Assembly (NCBI RefSeq): GCF_039654945.1
Contig: NW_027361788.1
Span: 33,046,001 to 33,110,000, forward strand
DNA from: Dendrobates tinctorius
Taxonomy: Eukaryota
Length of the DNA stretch: 64,000 nt
Direction: 5' to 3'
Part shown: piece after piece, positions 1,738-49,284 of the stretch
How positions within the stretch are numbered: the first letter of the stretch is position 1
How the letters are laid out: every line of letters begins with the position of its first letter
The notes under the pieces: generated by a model
Databases searched by the model: none
The model's input: only the letters and a program-made list of their open reading frames with translations
What the model was told of the DNA's origin: nothing
Made by a program: the position numbers and the translations under genes

Positions 1738-2011
1738 CCTTGGAGACCGACCACTGCTGCTGGATAGCAGAACATGCACAATGCTTACAAGCATTGCTTT
1801 CCTGCTGGCTGGGATCACTGGAGTGGGTCGTTACCTCCTTATCCCGCCACAGCTTCAGGTCAGTGCTTACAAGCTACATAGCAGTGGTGTGGTGGTCGGA
1901 GGGAACCGTACGCTCCAGTGTTGCTGGCCAGCTTCAAAATAACTCAGTAGAAACAAGCTTACAAACACAGTGCATGTTTTGTTGTCCAGCAGCAGCGGTC
2001 GGTCTCCTAGG
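1738..2011. mobile_element. MITE with ~50-bp terminal inverted repeats (second copy ~44092-44365 in the right arm)
   Basis: GGAGACCGACCACTGCTGCTGGA... pairs with ...TCCAGCAGCAGCGGTCGGTCTCC. Confidence 0.65.
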
Positions 2012-4822: not shown

Positions 4823-5408
4823 TCAAGCAAGGATTCTTCCAACACAAATGGAGCAAGAAATCGCGCTAGCCGAAGTTAAAATACTCGAGCAGGCATTGAA
4901 TCAAAACCTCGACCCGATTTGCCTACCACCACTGGAAGAAAAGGACCAAGCTGTCCGTACCAGTGATTACGTGCAGAAACAGATATCTGCAGCACACACC
5001 TTCTCCAGCAACGTTCAACTGAACAATGTGGAAATGTCCAAGTCAGCCCAACTTACGGTGCCAGTGTTACGCCATAATGCATCCCCTAAGGATCAACAAT
5101 CATCACAAGACGCACTCCAGTCCATCTCCACAGTTCTGTTAGGAGTCAGATTTCTGCCCCTACTATGCAGGAATCTAGACCCTCACATTCTGCAGTCTCC
5201 TGCTCATTGTCTACTGCAGGAGATATTGCAGAGGAGATTGCCTTGCAGCAACTCTCTCCGGAGGCTAAGTCCTTCTTTCCATCTTCTGAGCATGCTCGTG
5301 GAACGAGTCCCCATTGGTGTTCGGGAGTCAGGTGCTCAGGTCCTGCTCTTATTCCCATTGGTTCAGCTCAGAGTTTTGGAGACTTCCAGAAGGTCCTGTT
5401 TGCTATAA

Positions 5409-5704
5409 GGGTATGTGCACACGTAGTGAAATCTGCTGCGTTTCCGGCTCTGCGGAAACGCAGCAGATTCTGCTGCGTTGTACAGTACCTTTATTTTCAA
5501 TGGAAAAAAAACCGCAGTGCACATGCTGTGGATTTTTTCCGCGGTTTACAATCCACAGCATGTCAATTGTTTGGTGCAGAAACGCTGCAGTTTTACACCT
5601 CATCCATTATGAGGTGTAAAACCGCAGGGCAAAACCGCAGATAAACCGCAGGACTTTTGTCCTGCGGATGTACCTGCGGTTTTCTCTCCAAAATCCGCAC
5701 ACCC
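5409..5704. mobile_element. PIF/Harbinger-like MITE inserted in the Gypsy 5' LTR
   Basis: Absent from the 3' LTR (GCTATAAAAAGTGCG at 7946-7960); TAA TSD at 5406-5408 and 5705-5707; GGG...CCC termini. Confidence 0.85.
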
Positions 5705-6324
5705 TAAAAAGTGCGCATGGCTGTTCCGCCATGCGCTAGTATAGTCATACTTGCTGCTGTGTGTATGTTGATGGATGTATGATCTGGTGAATGACTCATT
5801 TGAAACCCCATTCCTATGATATTACGTCTGTGTGAAGGAATGAGTTATAGCCAGTATTAGCGCCAGCACGCCATTGCTCCACAAGCACACCTGCTAGCGT
5901 CTACATCGCGCCTGCGTTACTGCGGTGTTACTCTGCGGCATTCTCCACGCCGCGCTGCTGTAGCAGCTTCAGTGTGCGTTCGCAGTTGCAACGCTGTTCA
6001 CACAAGTAATTACGGTAGGTCTAGATGGATGTAGTGCCGTCATTTATAACTACTCCGGTGACCACTTACCGCTTGTGTGCCGCTGAGTCCCTGTGTCTCT
6101 AACAGGTTCAGCGTTGTTACATTTATCATTTGTAATAGCAGCTCTGTGAATTCAACAGAGATTGCTTAAGTGCACCTGGGTGATATCTAACCCTGTGCAC
6201 ACTACCGCCAGATTGCTCTTCCCTCACCTAGCAGCGGCTTTAACATCTACTGCACGGTGGACCCCGAGTGGCGAACGCACTTTATTTATATTTTTTATTT
6301 AGTGCCTTCCGCCACTCCTGACAT

Positions 6325-6335
6325 TATACTAGCGC
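6325..6335 (+). promoter_or_regulatory. Self-priming primer-binding site of the Gypsy element
   Basis: TATACTAGCGC just after the 5' LTR is the exact reverse complement of GCGCTAGTATA at 5733-5743 inside the LTR, ~30 nt downstream of the TATA box. Confidence 0.8.
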
Positions 6336-9300: not shown

Positions 9301-10759
9301 CCCAAATAAGGAACGACCCTAGCCTAGACTTCCTGGAGTCTAACACTACAGCTCCAGCAACACCGTCATCAAGGTATGAAAGCGTCTCACATGGACGCAA
9401 GGACTTGAGAAATAGTGTAAGTGTCAGAAAGACTAACCTGCCACCACCTGCGGTACCCTCCGATAACCAGTACACTATTCCGTCGAGAGATACGTCTTTC
9501 AATCGTGAGTGTCCCATTCACAAGAAACCACACTCGTTGAACAAATGTAGAGGCTTCAGGTCCAAAACCATGCAGGAGCGCAAGAAAATCCTCAGCGAAC
9601 TTGGGGTATGTTTCAAGTGCTGCACCTCATTAGAACACATGGCCAAGGACTGTAAATCTGCCATTAAGTGTGAAGAGTGTCATGGTGACAAACACCCATC
9701 AGCTTTGCATCCAACCTCAGCAACCAGCGATCCAGCAGTCGCAGTTACCTCTAGTCCGGCTACAAGCCATGACGGGGAGCCACAGAATAACGCCAATTCT
9801 ACCACGGCTGTCTCCTGCTCATGCTCAGAGGTATGTGGGGAGAGCCAAAGTGATAAATGCTGTGCCAGGATATGCCTAATCAGAGTTTATCCAGAAGGGC
9901 AACCAGAGAAGGCAGTAAAAATGTATGCCATCATTGATGATCAGAGCAATCGATCCCTAGCTGGACCTAAGTTCTTTGAAGCCTTTAGAATCAAGGGACC
10001 AGCAACGCCATATACTCTGAACACTTGCTCAGGCCGCATAGAGACCAGTGGCAGGAGGGCACAAGGTTTCATTGCTTCTCCTGTCAAGTATGGACTTCAC
10101 AATCCCTTGTGTGTATCATCTCTCCGGACACTGAACAGCATATGGTCCTGTCTGCTCTGCATTGAGGAAACGGAAGGGAGGAATCTCTCCCAGCCCCAAT
10201 CAGCTACACCTCCATTCGCCTCATGTGGGGACAGAACACACGGCATGTGCAGAAGGGATAAGGCTTACTAATTGGGGACACCATGCAGGGCGGTCATGCT
10301 GCTCTGTATAACAAGAGGCCTGTCATTCACCGAGAATCCCAGAAACCAGAGCTGGAGGTAGTTCTGCTCAATATTGCAGTAATCAGACAGTATAAAAATG
10401 CATGCATGAAAAAAAAACCTCATAGTTGCTTTAGACCAGAAACAGCGCCATCTCTGACCACAGGTCATGTCCGGTATTGCAGCTCAGCACCATTGCCGTA
10501 AATAGAGATCAGCTGCAATACCAGACACGACCTGTGAACAGCAGGGGCATTGTTTTTGGAAGAATAAAAATAACCATCTGTTTTTCAAGTTGCATAATAT
10601 CACGGTCCTGCTGCAATTTCACTTAAACGGATGCAGGTTTTCGTGGTCAATGGCTAAATAAATCCTTTTGGTACAAGATATTAAAAAGAATGACATTTTT
10701 CCATCTGTTCCTCTGCTTGTTGTCATTGAATAGGAACCATCATGGTTTATTGGTCACAG

Positions 10760-13495
10760 ATATAATCGTGACAGATGAGTGACGTCACCACTGAGCAGGT
10801 ATAACGTGACAGATGAGTGACGTCACCACTGAGCAGGTATAACGTGACAGATGGGGTGACGTCACCACTGAGCAGACATAACAGGTGACAGATGGGTGAC
10901 GTGACCACTGAGTAGACATAACGGGTGACAGATGGGTGATGTCACCACCGAGCAAATAAAATGGTGACAGATGGGTGACGTCACCACTGAGCAGATATAG
11001 CGGGTGACATGACCACTGAGCAGACATAACAGGAAACAGATGGGGTGATGTCACCGCCGAGCAGATATAGCGGTGACGGATGGGTGATGTCACCACTGAG
11101 CAGATATAACGGTTGACAGATGGGTGACGTGACCACTGAGCAGACATAACGGGTGACAGATGGGTGATGTCACCACTGAGCAGATATAACGGTGACAGAT
11201 GGGGTGAAGTCGCCACTGAGCAGATGTAACGGTGACAGATGGGTTGATGTCACCACTGAGCAGATGTAACGGTGACAGATGGGTGACGTGACCACTGAGC
11301 AGACATAACGGGTGACAGATGGGGTGACGTCACCACTAAGCAGATATAACGGGTGACATCTCCAGTGAGCAGATACAACGGGTGACAGATGGGTGACGTC
11401 ACCACTGAACACATATAACGGGTGACAGATGGGGTGACATCAGCACTGAGCAGATATAATGGGTGTCAGATGGGTGATGTCACCACTGAACAGATATAAC
11501 GGCGACAGATGAGTGACGTCACCACTGAGCAGGTATAACGTGACAGATGGGGTGACGTCACCACTGAGCAGACATAACAAGTGACAGATGGGTGACGTGA
11601 CCACTGAGTAGACATAACGGGTGACAGATGGGTGATGTCACCACCGAGCAAATAAAATGGTGACAGATGGGTGACGTCACCACTGAGCTGATATAATGGG
11701 TGACATGACCACTGAGCAGACATAACAGGTAACAGATGGGGTGATGTCACCTCCGAGCATATGTAACGGTGACAGATGGGTGACGTCACCACTGAGCAGA
11801 TATAACGGTGACAGATGGGGTGATGTCACCACTGAGCAGATATAACAGGTGACAGATCGGTGACTTCACCACTGAGCAGACATAATGGGTGACAGATGGG
11901 GTGACATCAGCACTGAGCAGATATAACGGGTGTCAGATGGGTGATGTCACCACTGAGCAGACATAACGGGTGACAGATGGGGTGACGTCACCACTGAGCA
12001 GACATAATGGGTGACAGATGGGGTGACGTCACCACTGAGCAGACATAATGGGTGACAGATGGGGTGACATCAGCACTGAGCAGATATAATGGTGACAGAT
12101 GGGTGATGTCACCACTGAGCAGATATAACGGTGACAGATGGGAACATCACCACTGAGCAGATATAATGGGTGACAGATGGGAACGTCACCAATGAGCAGA
12201 TATAACGGTGACTGATGGGGACGTCAACACTGAGCAGATATAACGGTGACAGATGGGGTCGTCACCACTGAGCAGATATAACAGACAGATGGGGTGATGT
12301 CACCACTGAGCATATATAACAGTAACAGATGGATGATGTCACCACCGAGCAGATATAACGGTGACAGATGGGGTGATGTCACCACTGAGTAGATAGAACG
12401 GGTGACAGATGGGTGACATCACCACTGAGCAGATATAACGGGTGACAGATGGGTGACATAACCACTGAGCAGATATAACGGGTGACAGATGGGGTGACGT
12501 CACCACTGAGCAGATATAAGGGTGACAGCTGGGGTGACGCTAGCACTGAGCAGATATAACGGGTGACAGATGGGGTGAAGTCACCAACGCAAAGATATAG
12601 CGGTGACAGATGGGGTGACGTCACCACTGAGCAGATATAACGGTGACAGATGGGGTGACGTCACCACCGCAAAGATATAGCGGTGACAGATAGGGTGACG
12701 TCACCACTGAGCAGATATAACGGTGACAGATGGGGTGACGTCACCACTGAGCAGATATAAGGGTGACAGATGGGGTGACGCTAGCACTGAGCAGATATAA
12801 CGGGTGACAGATGGGGTGACGTCACCAACGCAAAGATATAGCGGTGACAGATGGGGTGACGTCACCACTGAGCAGATATAACGGTGACAGATGGGGTGAC
12901 GTCACCACCGCAAAGATATAGCGGTGACAGGGTGACGTCACCACTGAGCAGATATAACGGTGACAGATGGGGTGACGCTAGCACTGAGCAGATATAACGG
13001 GGGTGACAGATGGGTGACGTCACCACTGAGCAGATATAACGGTGACAGATGGGGTGACGCTAGCACTGAGCAGATATAACGGGTGACAAATGGGGTGACG
13101 TCACCACTGAGCAGATATAACGGTGACAGATGGGTGACGTCACCACTGAGCAGATATAATGGGTGACGTCACCACTGAGCAGATATAACGGTGACAGATG
13201 GGGTGATGTCACCACTGAGCAGATATAACGGTGACAGATGGGTGACGTCACCACTGAGCAGATATAATGGGTGACGTCACCACTGAGCAGATATAACGGT
13301 GACAGATGGGGTGATGTCACCACTGAGCAGACATAACGGGTGACGTGACCAGTGAGCAGACATAACGGGTGACGTCACCACTGAGCAGATATAACGGTGA
13401 CAGATGGGTGACGTCACCACTGAGCAGATATAACGGTGACAGATGGGGTGACGCTAGCACTGAGCAGATATAATGGTGACAAATGGGGTCACTGC
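10760..13495 (+). repeat. ~39-41 bp minisatellite, consensus GGTGACAGATGGG(G)TGACGTCACCACTGAGCAGATATAAC(G), about 65-70 units
   Basis: Direct reading; it produces the spurious repetitive ORFs (SVVTSPICHRYIC). Confidence 0.97.
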
Positions 13496-13548
13496 TGGGG
13501 GTTTGTTACAACAGCACCTGGTCCCACACTGCAGGGGCCCCTCCAGCC

Positions 13549-13790
13549 CCAGACCCCGAGTTCTCCAACTTGAGGCTGAGGGTGTCCTCGATGATGCGGT
13601 TGTTCACCTCCAGCAGCATCATTGTGGCTCTGAAATGATTCACCTCACGGAAGGATGAAGCTGCTTCTCGACGTCCGTCAGTGACAGGCAGCCGCTCCCC
13701 GCCCAGACTCTCTGCTTTCCGTGCTACAAGACAGGCAATATGGCGCCTCCCGCTCACTCTTCCGCCGTACAACAATATGGCGTCAGTACG
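13549..13790 (-). pseudogene. ARPC2: Orphan 5' fragment of an ARPC2-like gene (promoter/5'UTR region and first coding exon only)
   Basis: 13622-13549 encodes [25 protein letters not shown] vs vertebrate ARPC2 [32 protein letters not shown] acceptor lies 7 nt before the ATG; there is GG instead of GT where the exon is expected to end; no downstream ARPC2 exons were found. YY1-like CGCCATATT x2 and ETS CGGAAG lie upstream. Confidence 0.8.
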
Positions 13791-14313
13791 AAGAAAAAAA
13801 GCAAACCTGCATCCATCATGGCAGAAAAATACTGTATCATCAATACTTCCACCATGGTGGACACAAATGACAGTTTATAATTATATTGTTATTAAAAGAT
13901 AAACTTTATTTCCGCCATAGAACAAAATGGCCCCCGGCGGAGAAGAAAGGCCCCACGGTCAGGCAGTAGGGCTGTCTGTGAGCTGCCTGTCCAGGGTGGT
14001 CTCGTCCCATTGATGGAAATATCAGGAATTCTGAGGCTGCAGTATGAGTGGTACACGTGAGAACATGGCCAGGATTCTGGACCAACACAGAGAACATATT
14101 TAGAACAATGAGATACTCTCTATATTCAGTCATCAGAACACCAGACAGAGCTTCTATCCCCATAAAATTATAGTACCAAGGTAAAAAATTCCCTAATCTC
14201 AATTATGCAAATAACTTCATTGTATAAACAGGGCAAGAAAAGTGCATCTAGTAATCACCATGGAAACATTAGTTAATAAAAACCAGTGGACAATGATGCA
14301 GCATGTGGGCAGC

Positions 14314-14468
14314 TTACACAACCATCACTAATATGTGTCACCTCAGGGAACCAGCACAAGTGTTACACAACATGCATGGGATTGCCTACAGTTCCACTGA
14401 GACACTGCATTTTGTGTAACACTTGTGCTGGTTCCCTGAGGTGACACATATTAGTGATGGTTGTGTAA
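14314..14468. repeat. Perfect ~57-bp inverted repeat (hairpin MITE remnant)
   Basis: TTACACAACCATCACTAATATGTGTCACCTCAGGGAACCAGCACAAGTGTTACACAA and its exact reverse complement, ~41-nt spacer. Confidence 0.85.
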
Positions 14469-15147
14469 GGCTACTTTCACACATCAGGTTTTCGGCGTCA
14501 GGCGCGATCCGGCGTCGTGCCGGAACGCCGGATCCGGCAAATGTTTAGTAAAACCGGATGTGACGGATCCGGTTTTCTGCCGGATCCGTCTTTTTCTTGA
14601 CAGACAAAACCGGATCCGTCTCATCCGGTTCATCCGTTTTTCTATCCGTTTTTCGACGGATTACGCCGGATCCGGTTTTTAAAATTGACCCTTGTGGCCT
14701 TCCGAACGGGATTGGCTACTGGAAAACTAGATATAGCATGTTCCTACAGCCCTACTTTGACAGGTTGTAGTGGGCAGAGCTACTGAGCATGCTCAGACCA
14801 AAAAACCGGATCCGGCCGCCGGATCAGGCTTTCGCCGGATCCGGCGCATTGCGGCGCTCATAGGCTTTCATTGTGTGAAAAAGCCGGACGCGCCGGATCC
14901 GGCGTGTCCGGCTTTTTCGCCGGAGACAAAAAACGTTACAGTAGACGTTTTTTCCAGACGCCGGATCGCGACACATTGCCGGATCCGGCGAAAACCGGAT
15001 GAAACGCATGGCCATCCGGCGCGATCCGGCGCAAATGCAAGTCAATGGGGGGGAAACCGGATCCGGCATTGCATTTCGCCGGATCCGGTTTCTGTCAAAA
15101 GCGCCGGATCGCGCCTGACGGCGAAAACCTGATGTGTGAAAGAGGCC
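14469..15147. mobile_element. PIF/Harbinger-like MITE rich in CCGGATCCGG palindromes
   Basis: TIR GGCTACTTTCACACATCAGG / CCTGATGTGTGAAAGAGGCC; TAA TSD on both sides. Confidence 0.85.
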
Positions 15148-15842
15148 TAAGCCACACACACGTTGCATCTTTTACCATGGTACTATATTGCATTTTATGG
15201 GGATAGAAGCTCTCTCTGGTGTGCTGATGACTGAGTGGTACACGTGGATTGGAGGCATCAGGAGGCACCGCTGCCCCTCTGCGGCGGCTCCTGCAGCAGG
15301 TCACAGCTCCTCATGGACCCATACTGCTGGTGTGAGGAGAGGGGACCCCCGATACATCATCCACTGACCCCCTGACTGATCACTGCAGCCATCAGCCCGC
15401 AGAACAACGCAGCATGCTACAAGGGAACAGGACCTTCCCTGCTGTCAGCGGCATGTGATCAGTCACATGACTGGGAGGAGCCAGGCAGTCGGTATAGGCG
15501 TTCTGCAGTACTAGGTAATTACGGAGCTCTGCACGGTGCACGTGTGAGATGCAGCGGAGCTGTGTGCCGGCTGCTGCAGTTGCCCCTGTGTGTGTCACGG
15601 CTGCTCAGTGGCGGATTATAATGGGGCAATGTACCCTGGGCTGGTGCCCCCCCCCACACCACTGGGCCCTGGGCTACCGCCCAGCTTGACCTCGTGATAA
15701 TCCGCCACTGGGTAAGCACGCCTGTGTTCGCTGCCAGCCTGGCAATGCAGTGCCTGAAACCCCGCCCAGCTGAGTGGACACGCCCACTCGCGTGAGTCAT
15801 AGTAGGCGTGGTTTTGCTGGCTCTCCGGCGGACAGGTCTTTG

Positions 15843-15855
15843 GTTGCTAGGTAAC
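15843..15855. promoter_or_regulatory. RFX X-box next to the CFAP157 start
   Basis: GTTGCTAGGTAAC, ending 35 nt before the ATG; X-boxes are typical of ciliary genes. Confidence 0.75.
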
Positions 15856-15890
15856 AGGACGCTACACTCTGTGACATCAGGAGAAGCAAG

Positions 15891-32340
<16,450 letters not shown>

Positions 32341-33826
32341 CAGTAACCTGCGCCTAGACACATAAGATGGACCGATTATAATAAACGCGGACGGTCAAGG
32401 CCAATCACGTACTTCAGTCACCGCCCACAGGAGCCGTCAGGGGTCATGTGATCAGTGTGCAAAAGTCATTGCTCCCTTCCCACCTTAGGAGGCGCATGTA
32501 ATATTGAGCTCTATTCTCAATGTATCTGATGTGAAAAAGGAGAATATAAAGCCACTATAAACGCTTCATATTTATTCGGAGAGAATTGAGAATATTCTTC
32601 CCATTCATAAAACCGAGCAAATCTGTAATATTGTGTTATGCCTGGTACAGGGCTGAGGAGTGTGTCCTGCTCTCCCCTCCCCGGCCCTGCACCAGGCATA
32701 AGTGTTCCTTTATTCCGCTCCCACCCAAAAAAAGTATATTTATGTGTGTTTAAGGTAGAAATATGTACAATATATTACTATACTTCAATTAGGAAAGGGG
32801 TCCTGATCTGGAGCGGTCACTGCCAGTCCTGACACTCTGCTGTGTGGGTGAAGGGGGCTGGCTGCCTAATGATTTCAATAGGTAAGCCAGCCCCCTTCTT
32901 TCTCCATCATGGCTGATTCAGTCAGGAGGGGGCAGGCTTAGCTATTAGACAGCCAGCCCCCTTCACATACAGCAATGATGATGAGCTGATTCAAGACATT
33001 TTCTCCTGGCTCAGGCACAAGGTAAAAGTGGAGCTGCCAGGATGGGCGCTGGTACCTGGAGATGGGGGCACGTGTATTAACACAAGTGTATTGGTACGTT
33101 GTGCATATTTCTATTTTAACACCTGTAAGCATATTATGAACTATGTATGGCATCGGTGCATTGTATTATTAAAGTAATTTCCCAGTCCAGTAAAATCTTT
33201 AGTATAGCAGATCACTATTGGATATAAGGGGGGGTCCCTGACAATCAGCTGTTTGACGGCATGGACCATGTCCTCCATCTTTATTTCTTTTAAGTGAATG
33301 GTCCCGGATTGCAATACCAGTAATAAAAGTATAAAGGAGTGTGACAGCTGACAGGAAGGGGTGTCGGACCCCCCACCATTATTGTACTGATGAATGAATA
33401 GGTAAACAATTTTTTGGATAGAAAAGGAAATCCCCTTTAATACGTGAGGCATGGGAGTGCTTATGAGGTTAAAAAAGTTAAGGGGGCTGTCAACGGCTGA
33501 CACTGAAGACCTAGCCTCTATCACATTAGTAAGGGTCCAACACTCGTTGCTGAGAACTGCAACCAGGGCTCTCATTGAGTTGAAGAGGAGCTGATCTGCA
33601 GTACCTATTATGGCCACTATACGGTGTGTGGCGCAGTGCTGTTCCAGCTCCTTACACTGTGTATATGGCCACTGCCAGAGCTGGTAACAGCTGATTGTGG
33701 GGTGCTGGGGGCCCAAGTAATCCTGTGATTACACCAGATGAGAGGTGGCGCCCTCCGCAGGTGGTTCTGTGCCGTGGTCGCCTTCTCTTCAGTTGAACGT
33801 TTATGAACTGAATATTCCAGCTACCT

Positions 33827-35995
33827 TCATATTCTGTTTTGCACCGGCCTAGTTATTGGCGTACTGGTTGCGGCCTGCGTCCTTTTTTGGATATGTCCAA
33901 GTAACAAGTCCAGACCTTTCTCCAAAACCAAGGTCAGCGTCTCCTGCTTATTCTTTGTAAAGCGTGCCAGTACATAGGGGGTCACCGAAGACTTGTCAGC
34001 CGGGCGTCCAATGCCAATCAGGAGTCTGATCATTGTCTGCCAAGGAAGAAAGAGAAAAACACAAAGTCTTCATTACCGAATCCCGGTAATGAAAGGTGGG
34101 CAAATATGGGCTCCAGAACTTACGTCTGATTTCAGGTGGTCAATGCAGGAACGGACACCATTGTGGCCCCTAGAAAATACAGGAAGCAGCCAAGGTCAGA
34201 ATACACATCATGTGGGTATAGCTTACAAGCTACAAGCTATCACCCACCAAAACAGGGATCAGACACTTAAAATAATCATTAAACAGTTAAAGTTCAAAGA
34301 TTTATAGATGTCAATAATTTGATTCAGTATTTATTGAGGAAGCCTGAGAGTCCTGCTCCTCCCACACGGTCTGAGCTGTCAATCACTGGCTGGGTGGGTG
34401 GAGCAAGGACTCCCACATTCTCTATAAATCCTAAAATAAATAGTATTAAGTCACAGAAAATAGATCTTCTCAAGCTCAGCTTGTCGTCTATGCAATGCTG
34501 CTGTGAATAGGGGGCAGGGCGAGTCCTCTAAAGTTGGCCAAGTGGTCTGCATTTCACTCAATAACGGACCAGATACCTCGCGCTCCCTCCGAGCTTCAGA
34601 GTCACCTTCCCCAGAGACTTGTCCAGTTCATCATGCAGTAGATAGATATTCTCAGGGGTCAGGCGGAACTTTCCAGCTGGGGAATAAAAATCCAAATAAG
34701 ATTATCCAACAGTAATTATCCCAAATAATAATAATAAACTTTGCAACCAAAAAATGTCAGTGATTATTGAGACCATAAATCAGAAATCATAGAAACTGAA
34801 GATGGTAAACGGGATGCTGCAGAACATCAACACTTACACTGAGCCAGAACAGAGCCAGCCTATAACAGGAACCCCATAACAAGGCCAGCAAGTCCCTCTA
34901 TGAAAACCAACAGTGATGGATTAAAGACAAAAAACAAAAACCACAGGATGCAGAGTTCCCTCATTACAAACCCAACGTGGAACAAGACCTCGCTATCCAA
35001 GGCAGCTGGTACAAGTGTCCCTATAACAGTAACTGTCTCCAAAGGATGCAGAACTAGGGGACTTATGTACATCCTAGATCTATGCCCAAAAGGGGTCTGC
35101 TGGCTCAGTTAGGGAGTTCATATGATGGCTTAAACTGCCATGAAGGGGGTGCCAGCTCGACCTGCCATGGGGGGGGTGAGACCAGAAAACAGCTCAATCT
35201 GCCATGGGGGGGTACCAGATGACAGTTCGATCTGCCATGGTGGCACCATATGCCAGCTTGATCTGCCATGAGGGGGTGCCAGATGCCAGCTCGATCTGCC
35301 ATGGGATGGGGGGGGAGAACCAGATGCCGGCTTGATCTGCCATGGGGGGGGGGAAGGGAACCAGATGATGGCTCTATCTACCATGGGGGTGCCAGATGCC
35401 AGCTTGATATGCCATGGGGGCACTGTTGTCTCATGTAGGTGACAAGTACCCCTCTTACATGAAGTGATTATTGACCTCACCAGCATTGGCCACACTGGTC
35501 CCATTAACATTCATAAACTGTCGAGGTTTTATCAGGACTAGATGGAGGCCATCAAACTGGGCGGTGACAAGATCGGCTCCCGTCTGTCTGTCTGTCTGTC
35601 TGTCTTTCACTGATCGGCAACATTGAGCCTCCCCGCCAGCTGATTAATGGCGGTCATGCCCACACTGTGCCTGGTGCCAGACATGCCATTATTGCCCAGT
35701 CCGACCACCTACACATAGAAGACAGTATAAAACATGTTACATTACACCAGATCACAAACTCACATGAAATACAGAGACACTTAGGGGACATGTGCTCCCC
35801 GGTAACACATCACACGGGGGGCAGCTTCCCATACAAACATGGCAGACAAGTATGGTTACAGTATGTCAAATACACCACTGTGAATAGTAATAAGCTCACC
35901 ATAAAGAGCCGCCCCCTGGTGGGACCCGCACTGGCTCCATGACTCATACACCGACCCAAGCGGAGACTGCACACGGCAGTCACTGACTGCAACAT
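33827..35995 (-). pseudogene. PTRH1: Peptidyl-tRNA hydrolase 1 homolog, unprocessed 5-exon copy with disabling lesions in exon 2
   Basis: Exons 35995-35900, 35708-35481, 34676-34577, 34169-34124, 34036-33827. Motifs VVGLGN, TRHSVG, FMNVNG, HDELDK, GGSARGHNGVRS, RLLIGIGRP. TGA at 35609-35607 where the homolog has Trp; (AGAC)6 at 35605-35582 shifts the frame and (AGAC)4 would restore it. Confidence 0.88.
35138..35420. repeat. Degenerate ~35-45 bp G-rich tandem repeat in PTRH1 intron 2
   Basis: Repeated (CAGATGCC)AGCTCGATCTGCCATGGGGG units. Confidence 0.75.
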
Positions 35996-37175
35996 AGTCC
36001 TCTACCAACATGGTGGAAAGCAGCTGACAACTTCCGGGTCATGTGACTGACAGTCACTGATGAGGCTTCATGATGTGATCCCTGTGTGCAGTACTACAGA
36101 GAGAAATGTATCGTGCAGAGAGAACATCGTAGTGTTGTGTGTCAGAAGGGAGAGCGAACCCTGCTGGTGGAAAATAAAATTACACCTACAACGCCTAATG
36201 TGACAGATGAGTAGTGTTAAGCGATACTTTCCGATATTGAGAAATATCGGATTGGACCGATACCCAAAAAGTATCGGGTATCGCCGATTCCGATACCAGA
36301 AGCCCCATGCAAGTCTATGGGACAGAAATATCGGAATTAAAAAAAACCCTTCCTTACTTGCACATCCAGTTGGGGGGGGAGTGTGGGCGGACACTGTGCG
36401 TGTCTGTGTGTGCGGGCGGGATCTGTACGGGCCTCTCGGGGGTTGTGTGTGTGTGTGCAGGTATCATCCGGTGGGACTACAAGTCCCTTTGGGGGATGCC
36501 TGCTACAGTGACAGTGATTGACACATTAGCCAATGATGGGACAGTAGTAGTCCCATCATCCGGCTAATGTGTTGAATGTAAAAAAAAAAACCATACATAC
36601 TACATACATAAAACATGCTAGACATACAACATACATGCTACATACATACTACATACAATACATTCATATAGACATACAGTACATATAACAGAGTACATAC
36701 TTACCATCACTTGTCACTTTGTTCCCCGAAGCCAGTGTCATCTTTAAAAAATATTAAAATAACAAACAACCGATATACTCCCTGATCCGCAGAAATCCAC
36801 TAGTGTCCCACGACGATCTCCCGTGGAGGACAGCAGCATCAGCTGATGCGACTGCTCTCTAGGGGCCCCAGGAATACAATGACGGGAGGTAGGTATCCTT
36901 CCGCACTGTATTCCTCCGCCACTGTAAGAAAATAGTCCCTAGTCTCACTTTTGGCATTGCTGTGTGAGAAAGTTCCCACGCAGCTCTTGCCATAAAGTGA
37001 GACCAGTGAACTATAGTAACCTCTCAGTGATGCACTGCAGGAGATCGTCGAGGGACACTCGTGGATTTCTGCGGATCAGGGAGTATATTGCTTGTTATTT
37101 TAATATTTTTTAAAGATGACACTGGCTTCGGGGATCAAAGTGACAAGTGATGATGAGTATGTACTCTATGTTATA

Positions 37176-38778
37176 CAGTGGGGCAAAAAAGTATTTAGTC
37201 AGTCAGCAATAGTGCAAGTTCCACCACTTAAAAAGATGAGAGGCGTCTGTAATTTACATCATAGGTAGACCTCAACTATGGGAGACAAACTGAGAAAAAA
37301 AAATCCAGAAAATCACATTGTCTGGTTTTTTTTCATTTTATTTGCATATTATGGTGGAAAATAAGTATTTGGTCAGAAACAAGCAATCAAGATTTCTGGC
37401 TCTCACAGACCTGTAACTTCTTCTTTAAGAGTCTCCTCTTTCCTCCACTCATTACCTGTAGTAATGGCACCTGTTTAAACTTGTTATCAGTATAAAAAGA
37501 CACCTGTGCACATCCTCAAACAGTCTGACTCCAAACTCCACTATGGTGAAGACCAAAGAGCTGTCAAAGGACACCAGAAACAAAATTGTAGCCCTGCACC
37601 AGGCTGTGAAGACTGAATCTGCAATAGCCAACCAGCTTGGAGTGAAGAAATCAACTGTGGGAGCAATAATTAGAAAATGGAAGACATACAAGACCACTGA
37701 TAATCTCCCTCGATCTGGTGCTCCACGCAAAATCCCACCCCGTGGGGTCAGAATGATCACAAGAACGGTGAGCAAAAATCCCAGAACCACGCGGGGGGAC
37801 CTAGTGAATGAACTGCAGAGAGCTGGGACCAATGTAACAAGGCCTACCATAAGTAACACACTACGCCACCATGGACTCAGATCCTGCAGTGCCAGACGTG
37901 TCCCACTGCTTAAGCCTGTACATGTCCGGGCCCGTCTGAAGTTTGCTAGAGAGCATTTGGATGATCCAGAGGAGTTTTGGGAGAATGTCCTATGGTCTGA
38001 TGAAACCAAACTGGAACTGTTTGGTAGAAACACAACTTGTCGTGTTTGGAGGAAAAAGAATACTGAGTTGCATCCATCAAACACCATACCTACTGTAAAG
38101 CATGGTGGTGGAAACATCATGCTTTGGGGCTGTTTCACTGCAAAGGGGCCAGGACGACTGATCCGGGTACATGAAAGAATGAATGGGGCCATGTATCGTG
38201 AGATTTTGAGTGCAAACCTCCTATCAGCAAGGGCATTGATGATGAAACGTGGCTGGGTCTTTCAACATGACAATGATCCAAAGCACACCGCCAGGGCAAC
38301 GAAGGAGTGGCTTCGTAAGAAGCATTTCAAGGTCCTGGAGTGGCCTAGCCAGTCTCCAGATCTCAACCCTATAGAAAACCTTTGGAGGGAGTTGAAAGTC
38401 CGTGTTGCCAAGCGAAAAGCCAAGAACATCACTGCTCTAGAGGAGATCTGCATGGAGGAATGGGCCAACATACCAACAACAGTGTGTGGCAACCTTGTGA
38501 AGACTTACAGAAAACGTTTGACCTCTGTCATTGCCAACAAAGGATATATCACAAAGTATTGAGATGAAATTTTGTTTCTGACCAAATACTTATTTTCCAC
38601 CATAATATGCAAATAAAATGAAAAAAAACCAGACAATGTGATTTTCTGGATTTTTTTTTCTCAGTTTGTCTCCCATAGTTGAGGTCTACCTATGATGTAA
38701 ATTACAGACGCCTCTCATCTTTTTAAGTGGTGGAACTTGCACTATTGCTGACTGACTAAATACTTTTTTGCCCCACTG
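37176..38778 (+). mobile_element. Full-length Tc1 DNA transposon
   Basis: ~200-bp TIRs, TA TSD; nearly identical to 26535-28138 in the opposite orientation. Confidence 0.95.
37543..38562 (+). CDS. Tc1 transposase, open 339-aa ORF (DD34E)
   Basis: Paired-like HTH N-terminus; catalytic motifs [13 protein letters not shown] and [11 protein letters not shown]. Confidence 0.92.
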
Positions 38779-40145
38779 TATGTACTGTATGTCTATATGA
38801 ATGTATTGTATGTATGTTGTATGAATGTAGTATATATGTAGTATGTATGTAGTATGTATGTATGTTGTATGAATGTAGTATATATGAAGTATGTATGTAG
38901 TATGTATGTATGTTGTATGAATGTAGTATATATGTAGTATGTATGTATGTTGTATGAATGTAGTATATATGAAGTATGTATGTATGTTGTATGAATGTTG
39001 TATATATGTAGTTTGTATGTATGTTGTTTGTACTATGTATGTTTTTTTTATTTTTCTTTTATTTTTTACATTCAACACATTAGCCGGATGATGGGACTAC
39101 TACTGTCCCATCATTGGCTAATGTGTCAATCACTGTCATTGTAGCAGGCATAGCCCGATGGGACTTGTAGTCCCATCGGACGATGCCAGCACACACACAC
39201 AACCCCCGGCAGGCCCGTACAGACCCCCGGCAGCCCGCACAGACCCCCGGCAGGCCCGCACAGACCGCGCATCATGATGACATCATTTCAGCAGCCAATC
39301 ACAGCCACAACACTGGCTCATTGCATTATGGGAACTTCCGATTCCGGTATCCGATATTGTAAAAATATCGGTACTCGGTATCGGAATTTCGATACAGCGA
39401 ATATCGGCCGATACCCGATATTTGCAGTATCTGAATGCTCAACACTAGAGATGAGACATATACCGAGAGATAAGCTAGAGACAGATTAGATATGGGATGG
39501 GGACTGCAATACAGTGGGAGGAACCGCAGCAGCTCAGCCACGAAATGGAGACCCTGCAATGTTACAGAGCAGGGGGACAAGTGCTGAGGAGCAGAGGGCT
39601 GAAAAGTCACCAACTTTCTAGTGACTCCATAACTGCCCAGACGTCCTCTGGTATAATATCAGGACCAGGGCCAGTTTTAGGCAAAGTTTAAAATGGGGCC
39701 CCAAATGCTAACATATTGCACATCACACAGAAGCATTTCGGTTGTAGTTACATGCGCTGAGTTCAGGCCGCTAAACGAGTGTGATCGACAATATTGAAGT
39801 CGTTCAACACTTGTTTCCCGGCCTCTTTCCACCGTCTGAGAAAGAATGATGGGAACAGAACGATCACTAATGGATCACTAACAGATCAACATACAGTATC
39901 GTGTTATCAGCAGCACATCTACAGTTTACACTCCATAGTCCTCCATATAATATAATGTCCCCCATAGTCCTCCATATAGTATAATATACTCCTCAGTCCT
40001 CCATATAGTAAAATACACTCCTCATAGTTCTCCATATAGTATAGTCAAGGGTGGATTCAGGGTAGCCAGGGCCCCGGGCTGTTCAGATTCTGTGGGCCCC
40101 GGGGTCAAGTGACAAACTGCATACTACAGTCCAGTGCGTACTCAC

Positions 40146-41067
40146 CAAACGACAGTATGTTCCCCTCTTTGTCCAATTTCATCTGTGAGCAGGAAAGTAC
40201 AACATTCACCGACAAATCACTGACATTAGTATTAAAGACAATATTGTATAAAAGTAATAAACTAAAAGCCCTATGTTCAGACACAAATTAATTCCAGTGC
40301 AGATTTTCCTGTGGATTTTCCCTCTAGCAGACTGCACACGGTAAAGGGAAAACGTGTGCTGAATCCATACCAGAAAAGGTGGGCCATATTATATGCACAG
40401 GGGATTATCTGGGAAACTTACCACGGAGAACACTGGAGCCACACTGGCCAACGTGGTCTGAGACGTGTCGGAATGCGTGTGCCGGGATAACGGACCTGAA
40501 ACACACAGGTTGAGAGTTACTGAACAAACACTGGCATCTGAACATCCATCATTAGGTGTGGGCTGAGATGTCGCTTGTTTCTAATGCTGGATCAATAAAG
40601 GATATTTGGATTTTAACACCAGAATAGATTTTTTTTCACCTATGATTTATGGATCGGGTCCAAAGGGCACTGCTGACTGCTGGGAATGTGAACTCCGATT
40701 TATGCTTTTTAATGGCAATTTCATTCATCCAACTTTCACAGTTCAAACAGGCGGCAGCGTCTGGACCAGGAGTGACCACCTCAGATTATGTGAGCGTACA
40801 CCGCAGCCAGCGAGAACGAGCGCCTATTGTACAGACCCTACCGACAGTCAAGTGAGCACAATGCGTCATTAGAGCGCACACAGTCATTCCTTCAGTGCTA
40901 TGCATCACCATTCCTTTACTCCGGCCAGGTATTGGAAAGTACGATACTAAAGTTGCTTGTTTATCCCCACCAGACTGGACAACCCCTTTAAACAGCCGGC
41001 CTACTTGTTGCCGGTGGTCTAACACTGCGTAGCGTAAGCGCTGTATAAGAACCAGTGCTGCTTCCTC
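40146..41067 (-). pseudogene. MRS2: Orphan internal exons of MRS2 (mitochondrial Mg2+ channel)
   Basis: Exon 40495-40422 (74 nt, PLSRHTHSDTSQTTLASVAPVFSV) and exon 40182-40146 (37 nt, MKLDKEGNILSF), both AG/GT-bounded, match human MRS2 SDVSQATLASVAPVFTV-TKFDKQGNVTSF. A phase-compatible 63-nt upstream exon 41067-41005 is possible but less certain. No start exon or later exons were found. Confidence 0.85.
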
Positions 41068-41169
41068 CTGTGTACAGAGATTACTGGGTGCAGGAGTACG
41101 GCGAAATGTGTACAAAACAGAGAAGACACCCGTGCTGCAAGGGGTTAACCGTCACCCTGGACTCCTGCT

Positions 41170-42201
41170 ACCTCTGTCACCCGTTATGTCTGTTCAGTGC
41201 TGGCGTCACCCCATCTGTCACAGTTATATCTGCTTAGTGGTGACGTCACCCATCTGTCACCGTTATATCTGCTCAGTGGTGACGTCACCCATCTGTCACC
41301 GTTATATCTGCTCAGTGGTGACGTCACCCATCTGTCACCGTTATATCTGCTTAGTGGTGACGTCACCCATCTGTCACCGTTATATCTGCTCAGTGGTGAC
41401 GTCACCCATCTGTCACCGTTATATCTGCTCAGTGGTGACGTCACCCATCTGTCACCGTTATATCTGCTCAGTGCTGGCGTCACCCCATCTGTCACCGTTA
41501 TATCTGCTTAGTGGTGACGTCACCCGTCTGTCACCGTTATATCTGCTCAGTGGTGATGTCACCCATCTGTCACCGTTATATCTGCTCAGTGGTGACGTCA
41601 CCCATCTGTCACCGTTATATCTGCTCAGTGCTGGCGTCACCCCATCTGTCACCATTATATCTGCTCAGTGGTGACGTCACCCCATCTGTCACCTGTTATG
41701 TCTGCTCAGTGGTGACATCTCCCATCTGTCACCCGTTATATCTGCTCAGTGGTGACGTCACCCCACCTGTCACCCGTTATGTCTGCTCAGTGGTGACATC
41801 TCCCATCTGTCACCCGTTATATCTGCTCAGTGCTGATGTCACCCCATCTGTCACCCATTATGTCTGCTCAGTGGTGACGTCACACATCTGTCACCCGTTA
41901 TATCTGCTCAATGGTGACATCACCCATCTGTCACCGTTATATCTGCTCATTGCTGACGTCACCCCATCTGTCACCGTTATATCTGCTCATTGCTGACGTC
42001 ACCCGTTATGTCTGCTCAGTGGTGACATCACCCATCGGTCACCCTTTATATTTGCTCAGTGGTGACGTCACCCATCTGTCACCCATTATATCTGCTCAGT
42101 GGTGACGTCACCCCATCTGTCATCCGTTATGTCTGCTCAGTGGTCACCCATCTGTCACCCGTTATATCTGCTCAGTGGTGACATCACCCCATCTGTCACC
42201 G
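41170..42201 (-). repeat. Second array of the ~40-bp minisatellite (about 25 units), inverted relative to 10760-13495
   Basis: TGTCACCGTTATATCTGCTCAGTGGTGACGTCACCCATC repeats. Confidence 0.97.
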
Positions 42202-42204
42202 TAA

Positions 42205-42555
42205 GGGTGGTTTCACATTAGCGTTTCAGGCAGCAGCGTCGGCCTGCGCACGGCCGACACTAAGCCCCGCCCCCCTGCCACACCTCCTCCGGTAGCTCCG
42301 CCTGTGGGAGCATGACGCTGCATGCAACCCCTATCTTTAGCACTGGGGACGCAGGCCGTGCGCAGGTATGCTTTTGGCGGCGCATGCGTCCTTTTGACGG
42401 TGCACCGAGCGCACCAAATTGCAACAGGTTGCGTTTGGCGCTGGTCGGCGCACCGTCAAAAGGATGCATGCGCCGCCAAACGCATACCTGCGCACGGCCT
42501 GCGTCCCCAGTGCTAAAGATAGGGGCCGCAGGCCGCATAGAGCGTCATGTGCCCA
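42205..42555. mobile_element. Truncated Harbinger-like MITE with a ~200-bp internal palindrome (42328-42525)
   Basis: TAA|GGGTGGTTTCACA start; CCCTATCTTTAGCACTGGGGACGCAGG... pairs with ...CCTGCGTCCCCAGTGCTAAAGATAGGG; absent from the left arm. Confidence 0.65.
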
Positions 42556-42559
42556 TCTG

Positions 42560-44914
42560 GAACCAATAAACCATGATGATTCCTATTCAATGACAACAAG
42601 CAGAGTGACAGTTTGAAAACTGTCATTCTTTTTAGTATCTTGCACCAACAGGATTTATTTAGCCATTGACCACGGAAACCTTCATCCGTTTAAGTGAAAT
42701 TGCAGCAGGACCGTGATATTATGCAACTTGAAAAACAGATGATTATTTTTATTCTTCCAAAAACAATGCCCCTTCTGTTCACAGGTCGTGTCTGGTATTG
42801 CAGCTGATCTCTATTTACGGCAATGGTGCTGAGCTGCAATACCGGACATGACCTGTGGTCAGAGATGGCGCTGTTTCTGGACTAAAGCAACTATGAGGTT
42901 TTTTTTTTTTTCATGCATGCATTTTTATACTGTCTGATTACTGCAGTATTGAGCAGAACTACCTCCAGCTTTGGTTTCTGGGATTCTCGGTGAATGACAG
43001 TCCTCTTGTTATACAGAGCAGCATTGCCGCCCCACATGGTGTCCCCAATTAGTAAGCCTTTTCCCTTCTGCACATGCCGTGTCTGTAGCCAAGTGTGACT
43101 CTGGAGGAATGGAATCGGGCCAGATTTATGATCTGCTTTAATTAGCACATAATTAATGTAAACCATAATGAACGGTTGGCACAGCGGCTCCGTTTGCAGC
43201 CAGAAACACGCTGCTTCAGCATTTTTTTTTTATCTTCAGAACATTTTTACTTTTATGAAAATAAAAATAGAGGCAGATAGTTTTTCTTTCCCCAGAATCA
43301 GCGCCACCCTTGTCTATAGGCTGTGACTGGTACTGCAGCTATAACCACAACCCCTCGGAGACGCAGCCAGTTTTGTTTTGTTTCTTCCTCCCCTTCACAT
43401 ATACCTGACATTGCTGTATGAGGGCTTATTTATTGCGGGTCGAGTTGTAGTTATGAATGACGCCATTCATCTTACCATACAATGCGGGATGAAAAGTGGG
43501 AAAAAAGTGCTGCCATTTTTTTTTTTACACTGTTCATTGTACATTAAAAAACATCTGGGACTATGATTCTCCAGGTCGGTAAGATCATAGCAATACCAAA
43601 CCTAAGGGTTTTCTAATTTTTTTGTGTTGAAGTGATTAAAAAAATTCTGACTTTTGTAAAAAAATATATATTTTTTTTATTTTTTTGGTGCCAGACTCTA
43701 CTTTTTTTCAATTTTCACATCGATGGAGCTGTGCAAGAGTTTATTGCGAAGTGAGCTATAGTTTTTATTGTAACATTTTGGGGAGCATTAGATGGTTTGA
43801 TAGCTGTTTTAGTACATTTTTTGGGAGATGGTCATTGAAGGAAAAAACTGTAGTCCTGCATTGCGCGGTGGGCGCTGAAACCACTGTACCAGTTTAGGTG
43901 CCACTGTTAGTCAATAACAGCTGCAATCGGAGCTAGCACTGGTCGCTGCTGTTGGAAGCAGGTGCTGGCTGTATAACACAGCTGATACCCACCATGTATG
44001 GAGCAATTCTACTTCCTGAGCCCCCCTGTGCCCGCTCCATACACCCTCATTTGTGATTTTCGGCTTTCCGGGACTAATATTGATTAGTTTTCCTAGGAGA
44101 CCGACCGCTGCTGCTGGACAACAAAACATGCACTGTGTTTGTAAGCTTGTTTCTACTGAGTTGTTTTGAAGCTGGCCAGCAACACTGGAGCGTACGGTTC
44201 CCTCCGACCACCACACCACTGCTATGTAGCTTGTAAGCACTGACCTGAAGCTGTGGCGGGATAAGGAGGTAACGACCCACTCCAGTGATCCCAGCCAGCA
44301 GGAAAGCAATGCTTGTAAGCATTGTGCATGTTCTGCTATCCAGCAGCAGTGGTCGGTCTCCAAGGCAACGATCTGTAAATAAAAAAAGTGTTAATATCTG
44401 AAGAACGGCTGAAAATGTAAATAAGCAGTAAATTGCAAATGTGCTTGTCCGGCAAAATCCATTTATGACGACGGGAAAAACTCCTTTAAATCAGGTGATT
44501 GTTGGGGGGTGCTGGGAGTCGGACCCTCATTGATCTGAAATTGATGGCCTTACCTAAGGAGAAGTGATCAAGCGTCCCAGAAACCTCTTTAATGTTTGAT
44601 TTTGGACTTTGCCCTCCAATCACAGCCCTCCAGCTCCCCAATAAGCCAACACGTTCCAACTAAGACAGAAACCGGGATTCTGCACCATAAACTTTATATC
44701 ACACACGTGAGACGTTACAGGTAACCAGCAACTTCCTACAGAAAGGTATAAATCTGACCGTAACATGATCACCTTACAGTTCAGCATTTACAGAAAAATG
44801 ATCCTTTTAAGTCCGTGTTCTGCCACCTGTGGCCCTCCAGCTGTCCCAGGGCATGCTGGGAGTGGTAGTTCTGAAATGGCTGGTCGGCCCCAGGTTGCAG
44901 ATCACAAATATAAG
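42560..44914 (-). repeat. Right arm (unique part) of the large inverted duplication, carrying the empty BEL target site
   Basis: Reverse complement of 1190-3032 plus 10244-10755; reads CTACAGA-CACGG-CATGTG uninterrupted across ~43071-43088. Confidence 0.95.

Positions 44915-49249: not shown

Positions 49250-49284
<35 letters not shown>

What the first reader, a model, noticed from the sequence alone, without database searches (positions are those of the whole stretch)
13490..41170. Both minisatellite arrays lie directly beside orphan fragments of unrelated genes (ARPC2 left, MRS2 right)
Seen: the left array ends ~55 nt from the ARPC2-like exon and the right array begins ~100 nt from the candidate MRS2 exon. 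Both fragments keep splice signals, so they were copied as DNA rather than retroposed. Established: human ARPC2 (2q35) and MRS2 (6p22) are not syntenic with CFAP157/PTRH1/CERCAM (9q34). Inference: the minisatellite may act as a portable homology adaptor, with ectopic recombination or template switching between arrays in different genes stitching exons into new loci.
Basis: partly seen in the sequence, partly recalled or inferred. Interest (0 to 1): 0.8.

Follow-up and report, generated by a model that had tools for sequence, protein, structure and literature searches.

The report
Gene pieces beside inversion-flanking repeat arms
In the dyeing poison frog, two short pieces copied from the unrelated genes ARPC2 and MRS2 sit just inside a pair of inverted repeat arms that bracket a flipped CFAP157-PTRH1 block, and the MRS2 piece is annotated as coding exons of a hybrid PTRH1-like gene; this looks like an ordinary complex rearrangement, and the idea that the minisatellite caused it could not be tested.

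Summary
Both arrays share one ~40-nt unit and are inverted (10757-13487, 41173-42202). An ARPC2 exon-1 look-alike (aa 1-25) ends 58 nt from the left array. The MRS2 look-alike is real: two exons with a retained intron, E 7.6e-8 when spliced. It lies about 660-680 nt from the right array, not ~100.

Three points are new.
1. The arrays are the inner ends of longer inverted arms (2.36 kb of non-array homology, 98.5% and 94.7% identical). Homology stops at the same unit phase in both arms.
2. The block between the arms (CFAP157-PTRH1) is inverted relative to CERCAM when compared with Spea bombifrons.
3. The MRS2 piece is not an orphan. RefSeq XP_073397179.1 (Dendrobates tinctorius) joins an exon in the right arm, both MRS2 exons and the last three PTRH1 exons. 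The right array lies in its intron 1.

Best reading: a lineage-specific inversion or complex rearrangement with inverted duplications and captured 5' gene pieces at the junctions.

The "portable homology adaptor" idea stays untested, because the parental ARPC2 and MRS2 loci were out of reach. The scan had already noted the 44-kb block on this same window (s1-389118).

The parts
1190..3030 (+). Left arm, outer part. It is the inverted copy of 43079-44914.
   Evidence: blastn gives 98.5% identity over 1845 nt. The outer end is sharp at 1190.
3031..10237 (+). LTR-retrotransposon-like insertion that splits the left arm only.
   Evidence: The empty site is present in the right arm and the target-site duplication is ACAC. 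A gag-like ORF gives a weak DUF1759 hit.
10238..10756 (+). Left arm, inner non-array part. It is the inverted copy of 42555-43082.
   Evidence: 94.7% identity over 528 nt.
10757..13487 (+). Left minisatellite array: about 70 units of ~40 nt, each carrying the palindrome GGTGACGTCACC.
   Evidence: The last full unit is the GACGCTAGC variant, followed by a 24-nt partial unit.
13548..13622 (-). ARPC2 exon-1 look-alike (Met1 to residue 25), 58 nt from the array.
   Evidence: The sequence is.
13623..14125 (-). Sequence upstream of the ARPC2-like ATG, a possible promoter relic. It is bounded by a 1.1-kb TIR element at 14126-15234.
   Evidence: CpG observed/expected is 0.92 in 13600-13799, against 0.56 for the window. 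The promoter role is inferred.
15891..32340 (+). CFAP157 coding range (522-aa RefSeq product).
   Evidence: First exon placed by similarity to Spea L004 18962-19161. End taken from the L001 gene call. Collinear with P. terribilis.
33827..36001 (-). PTRH1 exons. Canonical exon 2 carries a stop codon and a frameshift.
   Evidence: Pfam Pept_tRNA_hydro on the exons. tblastn with P. terribilis PTRH1.
39469..39665 (-). Last block collinear with other dendrobatoids. It corresponds to the native region upstream of PTRH1.
   Evidence: L002 9566-9775 and L003 9641-9762 match here. Nothing beyond it matches.
40146..40182 (-). MRS2-like exon B, 37 nt (MKLDKEGNILSF versus human TKFDKQGNVTSF).
   Evidence: Residues 54-65 of XP_073397179.1.
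40422..40495 (-). MRS2-like exon A, 74 nt. Protein similarity continues upstream to 40511.
   Evidence: Residues 29-53 of XP_073397179.1.
41173..42202 (-). Right minisatellite array: about 26 units of the same unit, inverted. It lies in intron 1 of the PTRH1-like gene model.
42203..42554 (.). 352-nt hairpin (MITE-like) insertion between the right array and the right arm. It is absent on the left.
42555..44914 (-). Right arm, 2360 nt of non-array sequence.
44245..44329 (-). First coding exon of XP_073397179.1, located inside the right arm. An identical twin lies in the left arm at 1774-1858 (+).
   Evidence: k-mer mapping of P0002. CDS range from the gene call.
47494..53701 (-). CERCAM-like gene (605 aa, Glyco_transf_25).
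   Evidence: Gene call in L001. Same-strand match to Spea CERCAM-like.

Best explanation
The two arrays are the inner ends of one duplicated segment: 2.36 kb of unique sequence plus a terminal minisatellite. It is present as two inverted arms at the two ends of a 27.7-kb CFAP157-PTRH1 block. That block is flipped relative to its neighbour CERCAM when compared with another frog, so the arms mark the two breakpoints of a lineage-specific inversion or complex rearrangement.

The ARPC2 piece (promoter-like DNA plus exon 1) and the MRS2 piece (two exons plus an intron) are short DNA-level partial copies of gene 5' ends. They lie in the two junctions between arm and flipped block. Most simply they were joined in during the same break-repair episode, or one of them was already in place there.

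Afterwards the right junction became a transcription unit. According to RefSeq, an exon in the right arm is spliced across the array to the two MRS2 exons and then to the last three PTRH1 exons.

Shown: the arms, their shared termini, the flip relative to Spea, the two fragments, and the annotated hybrid gene. Inferred: that the fragments arrived with the rearrangement, and that the palindromic array was where the DNA broke.
For: - Arms: 1190-3030 and 10238-10761 match 44914-42555 in inverted orientation (98.5% and 94.7%), and the arrays continue the homology.
- Both arrays end with the same GACGCYAGC variant unit plus a 24-nt partial unit, and then diverge within about 3 nt.
- Spea L004 has PTRH1(+), CFAP157(-), CERCAM(-). 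CERCAM matches the window on the same strand, while PTRH1 and CFAP157 match on the opposite strand.
- P. terribilis and Anomaloglossus are collinear with the window only up to about 39652-39665. Within 9.5-10 kb upstream of PTRH1 they have no MRS2-like exon, no 40-nt array and no arm exon.
- Arm divergence (1.5-5%) is far below the roughly 12-25% seen between the aligned D. tinctorius and P. terribilis blocks (identities).
- The hybrid gene is XP_073397179.1, which maps exon by exon onto the window.
- The array strand folds better than shuffles, z -3.2.
- Precedent: inverted duplications at inversion breakpoints (PMC1885836); tandem repeats at breakpoints (PMC4090240, PMC1794428, PMC3486850, titles and abstracts).
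Against: - Only one outgroup (Spea) shows CERCAM next to the block, so polarity rests on the arms being in D. tinctorius. Gene neighbours of PTRH1 differ among frogs.
- Arms of 3.4-5.1 kb (non-array sequence plus array) are longer than the at most 1.9 kb duplications described in Drosophila.
- Nothing dates the arrival of the fragments.
- The left breakpoint could not be compared with any relative.
- The gene model is an annotation. Its transcript support was not checked, because no reads could be laid.
Confidence: 0.5

Rival explanations
1. The minisatellite occurs in ARPC2 intron 1 and at the MRS2 locus. Ectopic recombination or template switching between arrays brought the neighbouring exons here.
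For: - The ARPC2 exon ends 58 nt from the array.
- Arm homology stops exactly at the array end.
- Each unit carries a 12-nt palindrome and the strand folds well.
- First readers noted minisatellites made of CRE palindromes at two other loci of this genome (LRRC36, DUSP16). This is an unverified lead, and their unit sequences were not seen.
Against: - The MRS2 exons lie 660-680 nt from the array, on its upstream side, whereas the ARPC2 array is downstream of the exon. One common geometry does not fit both.
- The arrays come with 2.36 kb of additional shared sequence, so they are not the only homology.
- The unit occurs nowhere else in the window, nor in seven other frog loci.
- A protein-word search with an array frame found nothing.
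Confidence: 0.12
2. One fragment and its arm form a single contiguous copy of a parental locus. For example, ARPC2 promoter, exon 1 and intron 1 with a native array and 2.4 kb of intron; or the MRS2 upstream region with array, exon 1 and exon 2. The other arm is the secondary inverted duplicate made by the inversion.
For: - The ARPC2 exon, a 58-nt spacer, the array and the arm are contiguous and co-oriented like promoter, exon 1 and intron 1.
- In the staggered-break model one arm keeps its ancestral inner junction.
Against: - There is no sequence from the parents to compare.
- No further ARPC2-like motifs occur in the arms or in the rest of the window.
- No Pfam hit on the arm ORFs.
Confidence: 0.15
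3. The arms are two copies of a mobile element with a terminal minisatellite and an internal promoter and exon. Each copy carried along (transduced) the gene 5' end that lay next to a previous insertion site, as Helitrons or SVA elements do.
For: - Both copies share the identical outer terminus and the same inner array phase.
- The arm contains a spliced first exon.
- The arm is partly built of dispersed repeats and hairpin MITEs.
- CRE-type minisatellites were noted elsewhere in this genome (unverified).
Against: - No target-site duplication for either copy or for the whole 44-kb unit.
- No terminal inverted repeats, no Helitron-type ends, no poly(A).
- No transposase or reverse-transcriptase domain in the arm ORFs.
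- The fragment zones share no common far terminus.
- Two copies with shared ends are equally expected from one duplication.
Confidence: 0.13
4. Assembly artefact: the inverted arms, or the placement of the fragments, come from a misjoin.
For: Inverted repeats and minisatellites are hard to assemble, and no read evidence could be obtained.
Against: - There are no gaps in the window.
- The arms differ by a 7.2-kb retrotransposon with its own target-site duplication, by a 352-nt insertion, by 1.5-5% substitutions and by array length. These are signs of two real, separately evolving copies.
- RefSeq built a spliced model across the right junction.
Confidence: 0.03

Closest known systems
Inversions flanked by inverted duplications of breakpoint sequence (staggered-break model; Ranz et al. 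2007, PMC1885836)
   Same: Two copies of one sequence, in inverted orientation, sit at the two ends of a segment that is inverted relative to an outgroup. The copies diverge and decay independently.
   Different: The arms here are 3.4-5.1 kb with the array, against at most 1.9 kb in Drosophila. They end in a minisatellite. Extra pieces of unrelated genes lie between arm and inverted block. Polarity rests on one outgroup.
Tandem repeats and minisatellites at rearrangement breakpoints (PMC4090240, PMC1794428; CEB1/CEB25 minisatellites stimulating gross rearrangements in yeast, PMC3486850)
   Same: The homology between the arms ends within about 3 nt of the array end. This is what would be seen if the break fell at the edge of a structure-forming tandem repeat.
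   Different: Those studies show enrichment or stimulation of breakage. They do not show that an array serves as shared homology to import exons. No breakage was measured here.
Minisatellite-like repeats at junctions of pericentromeric duplicated gene segments in primates
   Same: Partial gene copies with intact exon-intron structure from unlinked loci are juxtaposed next to short tandem repeats.
   Different: Those are large mosaics in pericentromeric DNA with many donor loci. Here there are two sub-kilobase to 1-kb pieces at one inversion.
Capture of gene 5' ends by mobile elements (Helitron capture of promoter plus first exon in bats; SVA-F1 with MAST2 exon 1; my own recollection, not checked here)
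   Same: Promoter-proximal pieces of housekeeping genes lie next to a repeat-bearing element, and captured exons are used in hybrid transcripts.
   Different: No element termini, target-site duplications or element proteins were found. The copy number of the arm is unknown.
Chimeric genes from partial duplicates (review PMC3449122, seen as title and abstract only)
   Same: A partial duplicate of one gene supplies 5' coding exons to another gene, here MRS2 exons joined in frame to PTRH1 exons.
   Different: The recipient PTRH1 has lost its catalytic N-terminal exons from the open frame, so the hybrid is more likely a by-product of decay than a new function.

Membership tests
Inversion with inverted duplications at both breakpoints | Two copies of one sequence in inverted orientation at the two ends of the segment | tested here: met
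   Arms plus arrays at 1190-13487 versus 41173-44914.
Inversion with inverted duplications at both breakpoints | The enclosed segment is inverted relative to an outgroup gene order | tested here: met
   In Spea L004, CERCAM matches on the same strand and PTRH1/CFAP157 on the opposite strand. This is one outgroup only. Other frogs have other neighbours.
Inversion with inverted duplications at both breakpoints | The duplicated sequence is single-copy at one breakpoint in the uninverted ancestor | not testable with these tools
   No relative's sequence reaches the CFAP157-upstream side. The P. terribilis locus ends at about window 16400.
DNA-mediated partial gene duplicate (not a retrocopy) | Intron retained between consecutive exons, with splice signals | tested here: met
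   MRS2 exons A and B are separated by a 239-nt intron with GTAAGT...CAG signals. ARPC2 is a single exon followed by non-coding sequence.
DNA-mediated partial gene duplicate (not a retrocopy) | A full-length parent gene elsewhere in the same genome | not tested
   The only support is a scan note that ARPC2 lies beside a keratin pair on another piece (s1-369535). No note or sequence exists for MRS2.
ARPC2 (Arp2/3 complex 34-kDa subunit) gene | Full-length ARPC2 coding sequence (about 300 aa) | tested here: not met
   Only residues 1-25 are present.
MRS2 magnesium channel gene | Full coding sequence including the transmembrane GMN region | tested here: not met
   Only residues about 59-103 are present. 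No later motifs were found (lead only).
Transposable element (arm plus array as one element) | Target-site duplication and defined termini (TIR, Helitron ends or poly(A)) | tested here: not met
   The flanks of each arm and of the whole block share no duplication, and no terminal inverted repeat or CTRR end is present.
Transposable element (arm plus array as one element) | Element-encoded protein | tested here: not met
   No Pfam family on the arm ORFs.
Transposable element (arm plus array as one element) | Many dispersed copies in the genome | not testable with these tools
An exact-ORF look-up was blank. The findings search by sequence was blank, which means nothing.

The most novel reading that the evidence does not exclude
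The 2.36-kb arm with its terminal palindromic minisatellite is a duplicative or mobile cassette that carries its own promoter and spliced first exon. It picks up the 5' ends of genes next to its array end and so builds hybrid genes. The arm-MRS2-PTRH1 model would be one caught example. This would be a new frog vehicle for exon shuffling, in which the array end is the capture site.
Probability: 0.1. Interest if true: 0.75.

Novelty: new member of a known kind. Interest (0 to 1): 0.4.

Why it matters
This is a compact, fully sequenced example of several things at once. A small inversion is bracketed by inverted duplications. Tandem-repeat ends coincide with the ends of homology. Pieces of unlinked genes sit in the junctions. 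One of those pieces has already been spliced, in frame, into a neighbouring gene.

Such cases show how break repair can shuffle exons in very large, repeat-rich amphibian genomes. It also coincides with apparent decay of PTRH1 in this species.

That would be of wider interest.

Tried and rejected
1. Read evidence. The look-up of sequencing runs listed DNA runs and possible RNA runs. So there is no depth, copy-number, splice or parental-locus evidence. Sequence comparisons (local BLAST) were run on a masked copy of the window. The other local scripts read the unmasked window only as a target or for composition.
2. The word search with the MRS2 exon piece found nothing.
3. The word search with an array-encoded frame had no hit among 8000 candidates. 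Low complexity may be the reason.
4. An exact look-up of an arm ORF was not on record. This is uninformative, because start choice matters.
5. The findings search by array sequence was blank, which means nothing.
6. The frame next to the right array (40789-41151) had no MRS2 similarity and no Pfam hit. An eyeballed resemblance to the MRS2 N-terminus there is dropped.
7. The 29-31-nt repeat at 39930-40043 matches a P. terribilis array, but in the wrong orientation for collinearity. I treat it as a dispersed repeat, not as orthology.
8. A weak arm match to P. terribilis upstream DNA proved to be a dispersed repeat that also lies upstream of CFAP157.
9. Helitron, TIR and LINE readings of the arm termini found no fitting ends or duplications.
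10. Retrieving D. tinctorius ARPC2, MRS2 or CFAP157 proteins to fetch their loci was not possible. The length window of the word search excludes them, and long spliced sequences may not be typed.
11. Two look-ups (Engystomops, Hymenochirus) were not on record. The E. coqui and Nanorana loci added no CERCAM information.

Full report
**What is there**

The window has no gaps. One tandem-repeat family of about 39-40 nt occurs twice. Its consensus is GGGTGACGTCACCACTGAGCAGATATAACGGTGACAGATG, and it contains the 12-nt palindrome GGTGACGTCACC. It lies at 10757-13487 and, reverse-complemented, at 41173-42202. A search for the unit core finds 88 matches, all inside the two arrays, against none expected by chance.

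**The arrays are ends of longer inverted arms**

- Repeat finding and BLAST show that 1190-3030 pairs with 44914-43079 (98.5%), and 10238-10761 pairs with 43082-42555 (94.7%). The arrays follow directly.
- The left arm is split by a 7.2-kb LTR-retrotransposon-like insertion (3031-10237). Its target-site duplication is ACAC, and the empty site is preserved in the right arm.
- The right arm has a 352-nt hairpin insertion between array and arm.
- Each arm therefore has 2360 nt of non-array sequence plus an array at its inner end.
- Both arrays finish with the same rare unit variant (GACGCYAGC) followed by a 24-nt partial unit. After that the two sides become unrelated within about 3 nt. The outer ends are equally sharp.
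- I found no target-site duplications, terminal inverted repeats, Helitron-type ends or element proteins.

**The ARPC2 piece**

On the minus strand, 13548-13622 encodes a peptide that matches ARPC2 residues 1-25 from the initiator methionine (E 4e-5 against solved structures).

The 200 nt upstream are relatively CpG-rich. After the exon the frame does not continue into ARPC2-like sequence. A motif search for later ARPC2 exons found none in the window. That search used short motifs from memory, so it is a lead only.

A scan note places the real ARPC2 on another piece of this genome (s1-369535). I did not verify this.

From then on I sent none of those letters to any search tool and masked them in local sequence comparisons.

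**The MRS2 piece**

The similarity is not about 100 nt from the right array. The frame next to the array has no MRS2 or Pfam match.

- The real similarity is at 40422-40495 and continues upstream to 40511 (E 6e-4 alone).
- A second, 37-nt exon lies at 40146-40182 (MKLDKEGNILSF versus human TKFDKQGNVTSF).
- The two are separated by a 239-nt intron with consensus signals.
- Spliced together they match human MRS2 residues 62-103 with E 7.6e-8.

The piece is therefore real and copied as DNA, and it lies 661-677 nt from the array.

**The MRS2 piece is not an orphan**

The exhaustive protein search with the exon-A frame returned a 183-aa protein that is 93% identical over the matched stretch. It is XP_073397179.1, "peptidyl-tRNA hydrolase-like isoform X1" of Dendrobates tinctorius, and it is encoded in this very window (GCA_039654945.1, JAYMGB010000046.1).

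Mapping its residues gives this exon chain:
- a first coding exon inside the right arm (44245-44329, minus strand), with an identical twin in the left arm at 1774-1858;
- MRS2-like exons A and B;
- the last three PTRH1 exons.

The right array is therefore in intron 1 of an annotated hybrid gene. Exon B ends in the same codon phase as the canonical PTRH1 exon it replaces, so the frame is kept.

The canonical PTRH1 exon 2 carries a stop codon and a frameshift. The only D. tinctorius PTRH proteins on record are two "-like" isoforms that skip it. The model is an annotation, and I could not check its transcript support.

**Comparison with other frogs**

- In Spea bombifrons the order is PTRH1(+), CFAP157(-), CERCAM-like(-).
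- CERCAM aligns to the window on the same strand. PTRH1 and CFAP157 align on the opposite strand.
- The block between the arms is therefore inverted relative to CERCAM, and the arms sit at exactly its two ends.
- Phyllobates terribilis and Anomaloglossus are collinear with the window through CFAP157 and PTRH1, up to about 39652-39665, which is the native region upstream of PTRH1.
- Within the 9.5-10 kb further upstream they show no MRS2-like exon, no 40-nt array and no arm exon. Only dispersed repeats match.
- Upstream neighbours of PTRH1 differ among frogs: SPTAN1 in Spea, a torsin in Leptodactylus, ZDHHC12 in Nanorana. The region is rearrangement-prone, and the polarity of the inversion rests on one outgroup plus the location of the arms.
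- Arm divergence (1.5-5%) is far below the divergence of the aligned D. tinctorius and P. terribilis blocks. This fits a young, lineage-specific event, or later gene conversion between the arms.

**Reading**

The simplest account is a lineage-specific inversion or complex rearrangement whose two breakpoints carry inverted duplicates of one segment. This pattern is described for most fixed Drosophila inversions and is attributed there to staggered breaks (PMC1885836).

The homology ends at the edge of a palindrome-bearing minisatellite whose single strand folds better than shuffles (z -3.2). This agrees with the known tendency of tandem repeats to mark breakpoints (PMC4090240, PMC1794428, PMC3486850).

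The two gene pieces lie in the junctions. Both are 5' ends of housekeeping genes and both are on the minus strand. I infer that they were joined in during repair, or that one was already there. This step is not shown.

Three observations count against it:
- the geometry is unequal (58 nt downstream of the ARPC2 exon, against about 670 nt upstream of the MRS2 exons);
- there are 2.36 kb of further arm homology;
- the inversion context explains both junctions.

The idea is not refuted, because the parental loci were out of reach. First readers noted minisatellites made of CRE palindromes at two other loci of this genome. That is a lead worth following.

**Verdict**

The finding is best filed as a new example of known kinds: inversion-associated inverted duplication, partial gene duplicates at breakpoints, and a hybrid gene model. 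It is of moderate interest. The scan had already noted the 44-kb block on this same window (s1-389118).

Noticed in passing
window 35380-36001 (minus strand): Canonical PTRH1 exon 2 has an in-frame stop (ADQ*KTDR) and a frameshift inside a DRQT repeat. The only D. tinctorius PTRH proteins on record are two '-like' isoforms that skip it and lack the GTRHSVG catalytic-histidine stretch. PTRH1 may be decaying in this species.
   Followed up: partly
window 36402-39244: A 2.8-kb element with about 235-nt inverted ends, absent in P. terribilis, contains a Tc1-like transposon with an intact 339-aa ORF. It separates the conserved PTRH1 upstream block (39469-39665) from PTRH1 exon 1. A second Tc1 copy, 99% identical and inverted, lies at 26532-28133.
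   Followed up: partly
window 1774-1858 (+): The left arm carries an identical twin of the first coding exon of XP_073397179.1, pointing inward towards CFAP157. Whether it is transcribed or spliced to CFAP157 is unknown.
   Followed up: no
window 9.2 kb arm comparison: 1190-3030 versus 10238-10761: Arm identity drops from 98.5% (outer 1.8 kb) to 94.7% (524 nt next to the arrays). The step coincides with the retrotransposon insertion point. Gene conversion limited to the outer part would explain it.
   Followed up: no
window 59431-64000: A 389-399-nt satellite (two blocks) flanks a 315-nt telomere-like (AGGGTT)n tract at 62700-63014, about 9 kb beyond CERCAM.
   Followed up: no
L002 6091-7488 and 8681-9357; L003 2777-6071 and 7589-9588: In P. 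terribilis and Anomaloglossus, large unrelated minisatellites (27-42-nt units, 22-78 copies) lie just upstream of the conserved PTRH1 promoter block. The same spot in D. tinctorius holds a short 29-nt array. This position seems prone to tandem-repeat growth.
   Followed up: no
P0001 (403 aa): The best hit of the exhaustive search was an unrelated repetitive protein (seven matched stretches, units such as LHRQTSLSFCVNWPLPQHTYT). It matched the low-information part of the query. I judge it spurious.
   Followed up: no
window 4495-4816: A 27-nt in-frame tandem repeat (AEAQAESKK-type) lies inside an ORF of the retrotransposon-like insertion.
   Followed up: no
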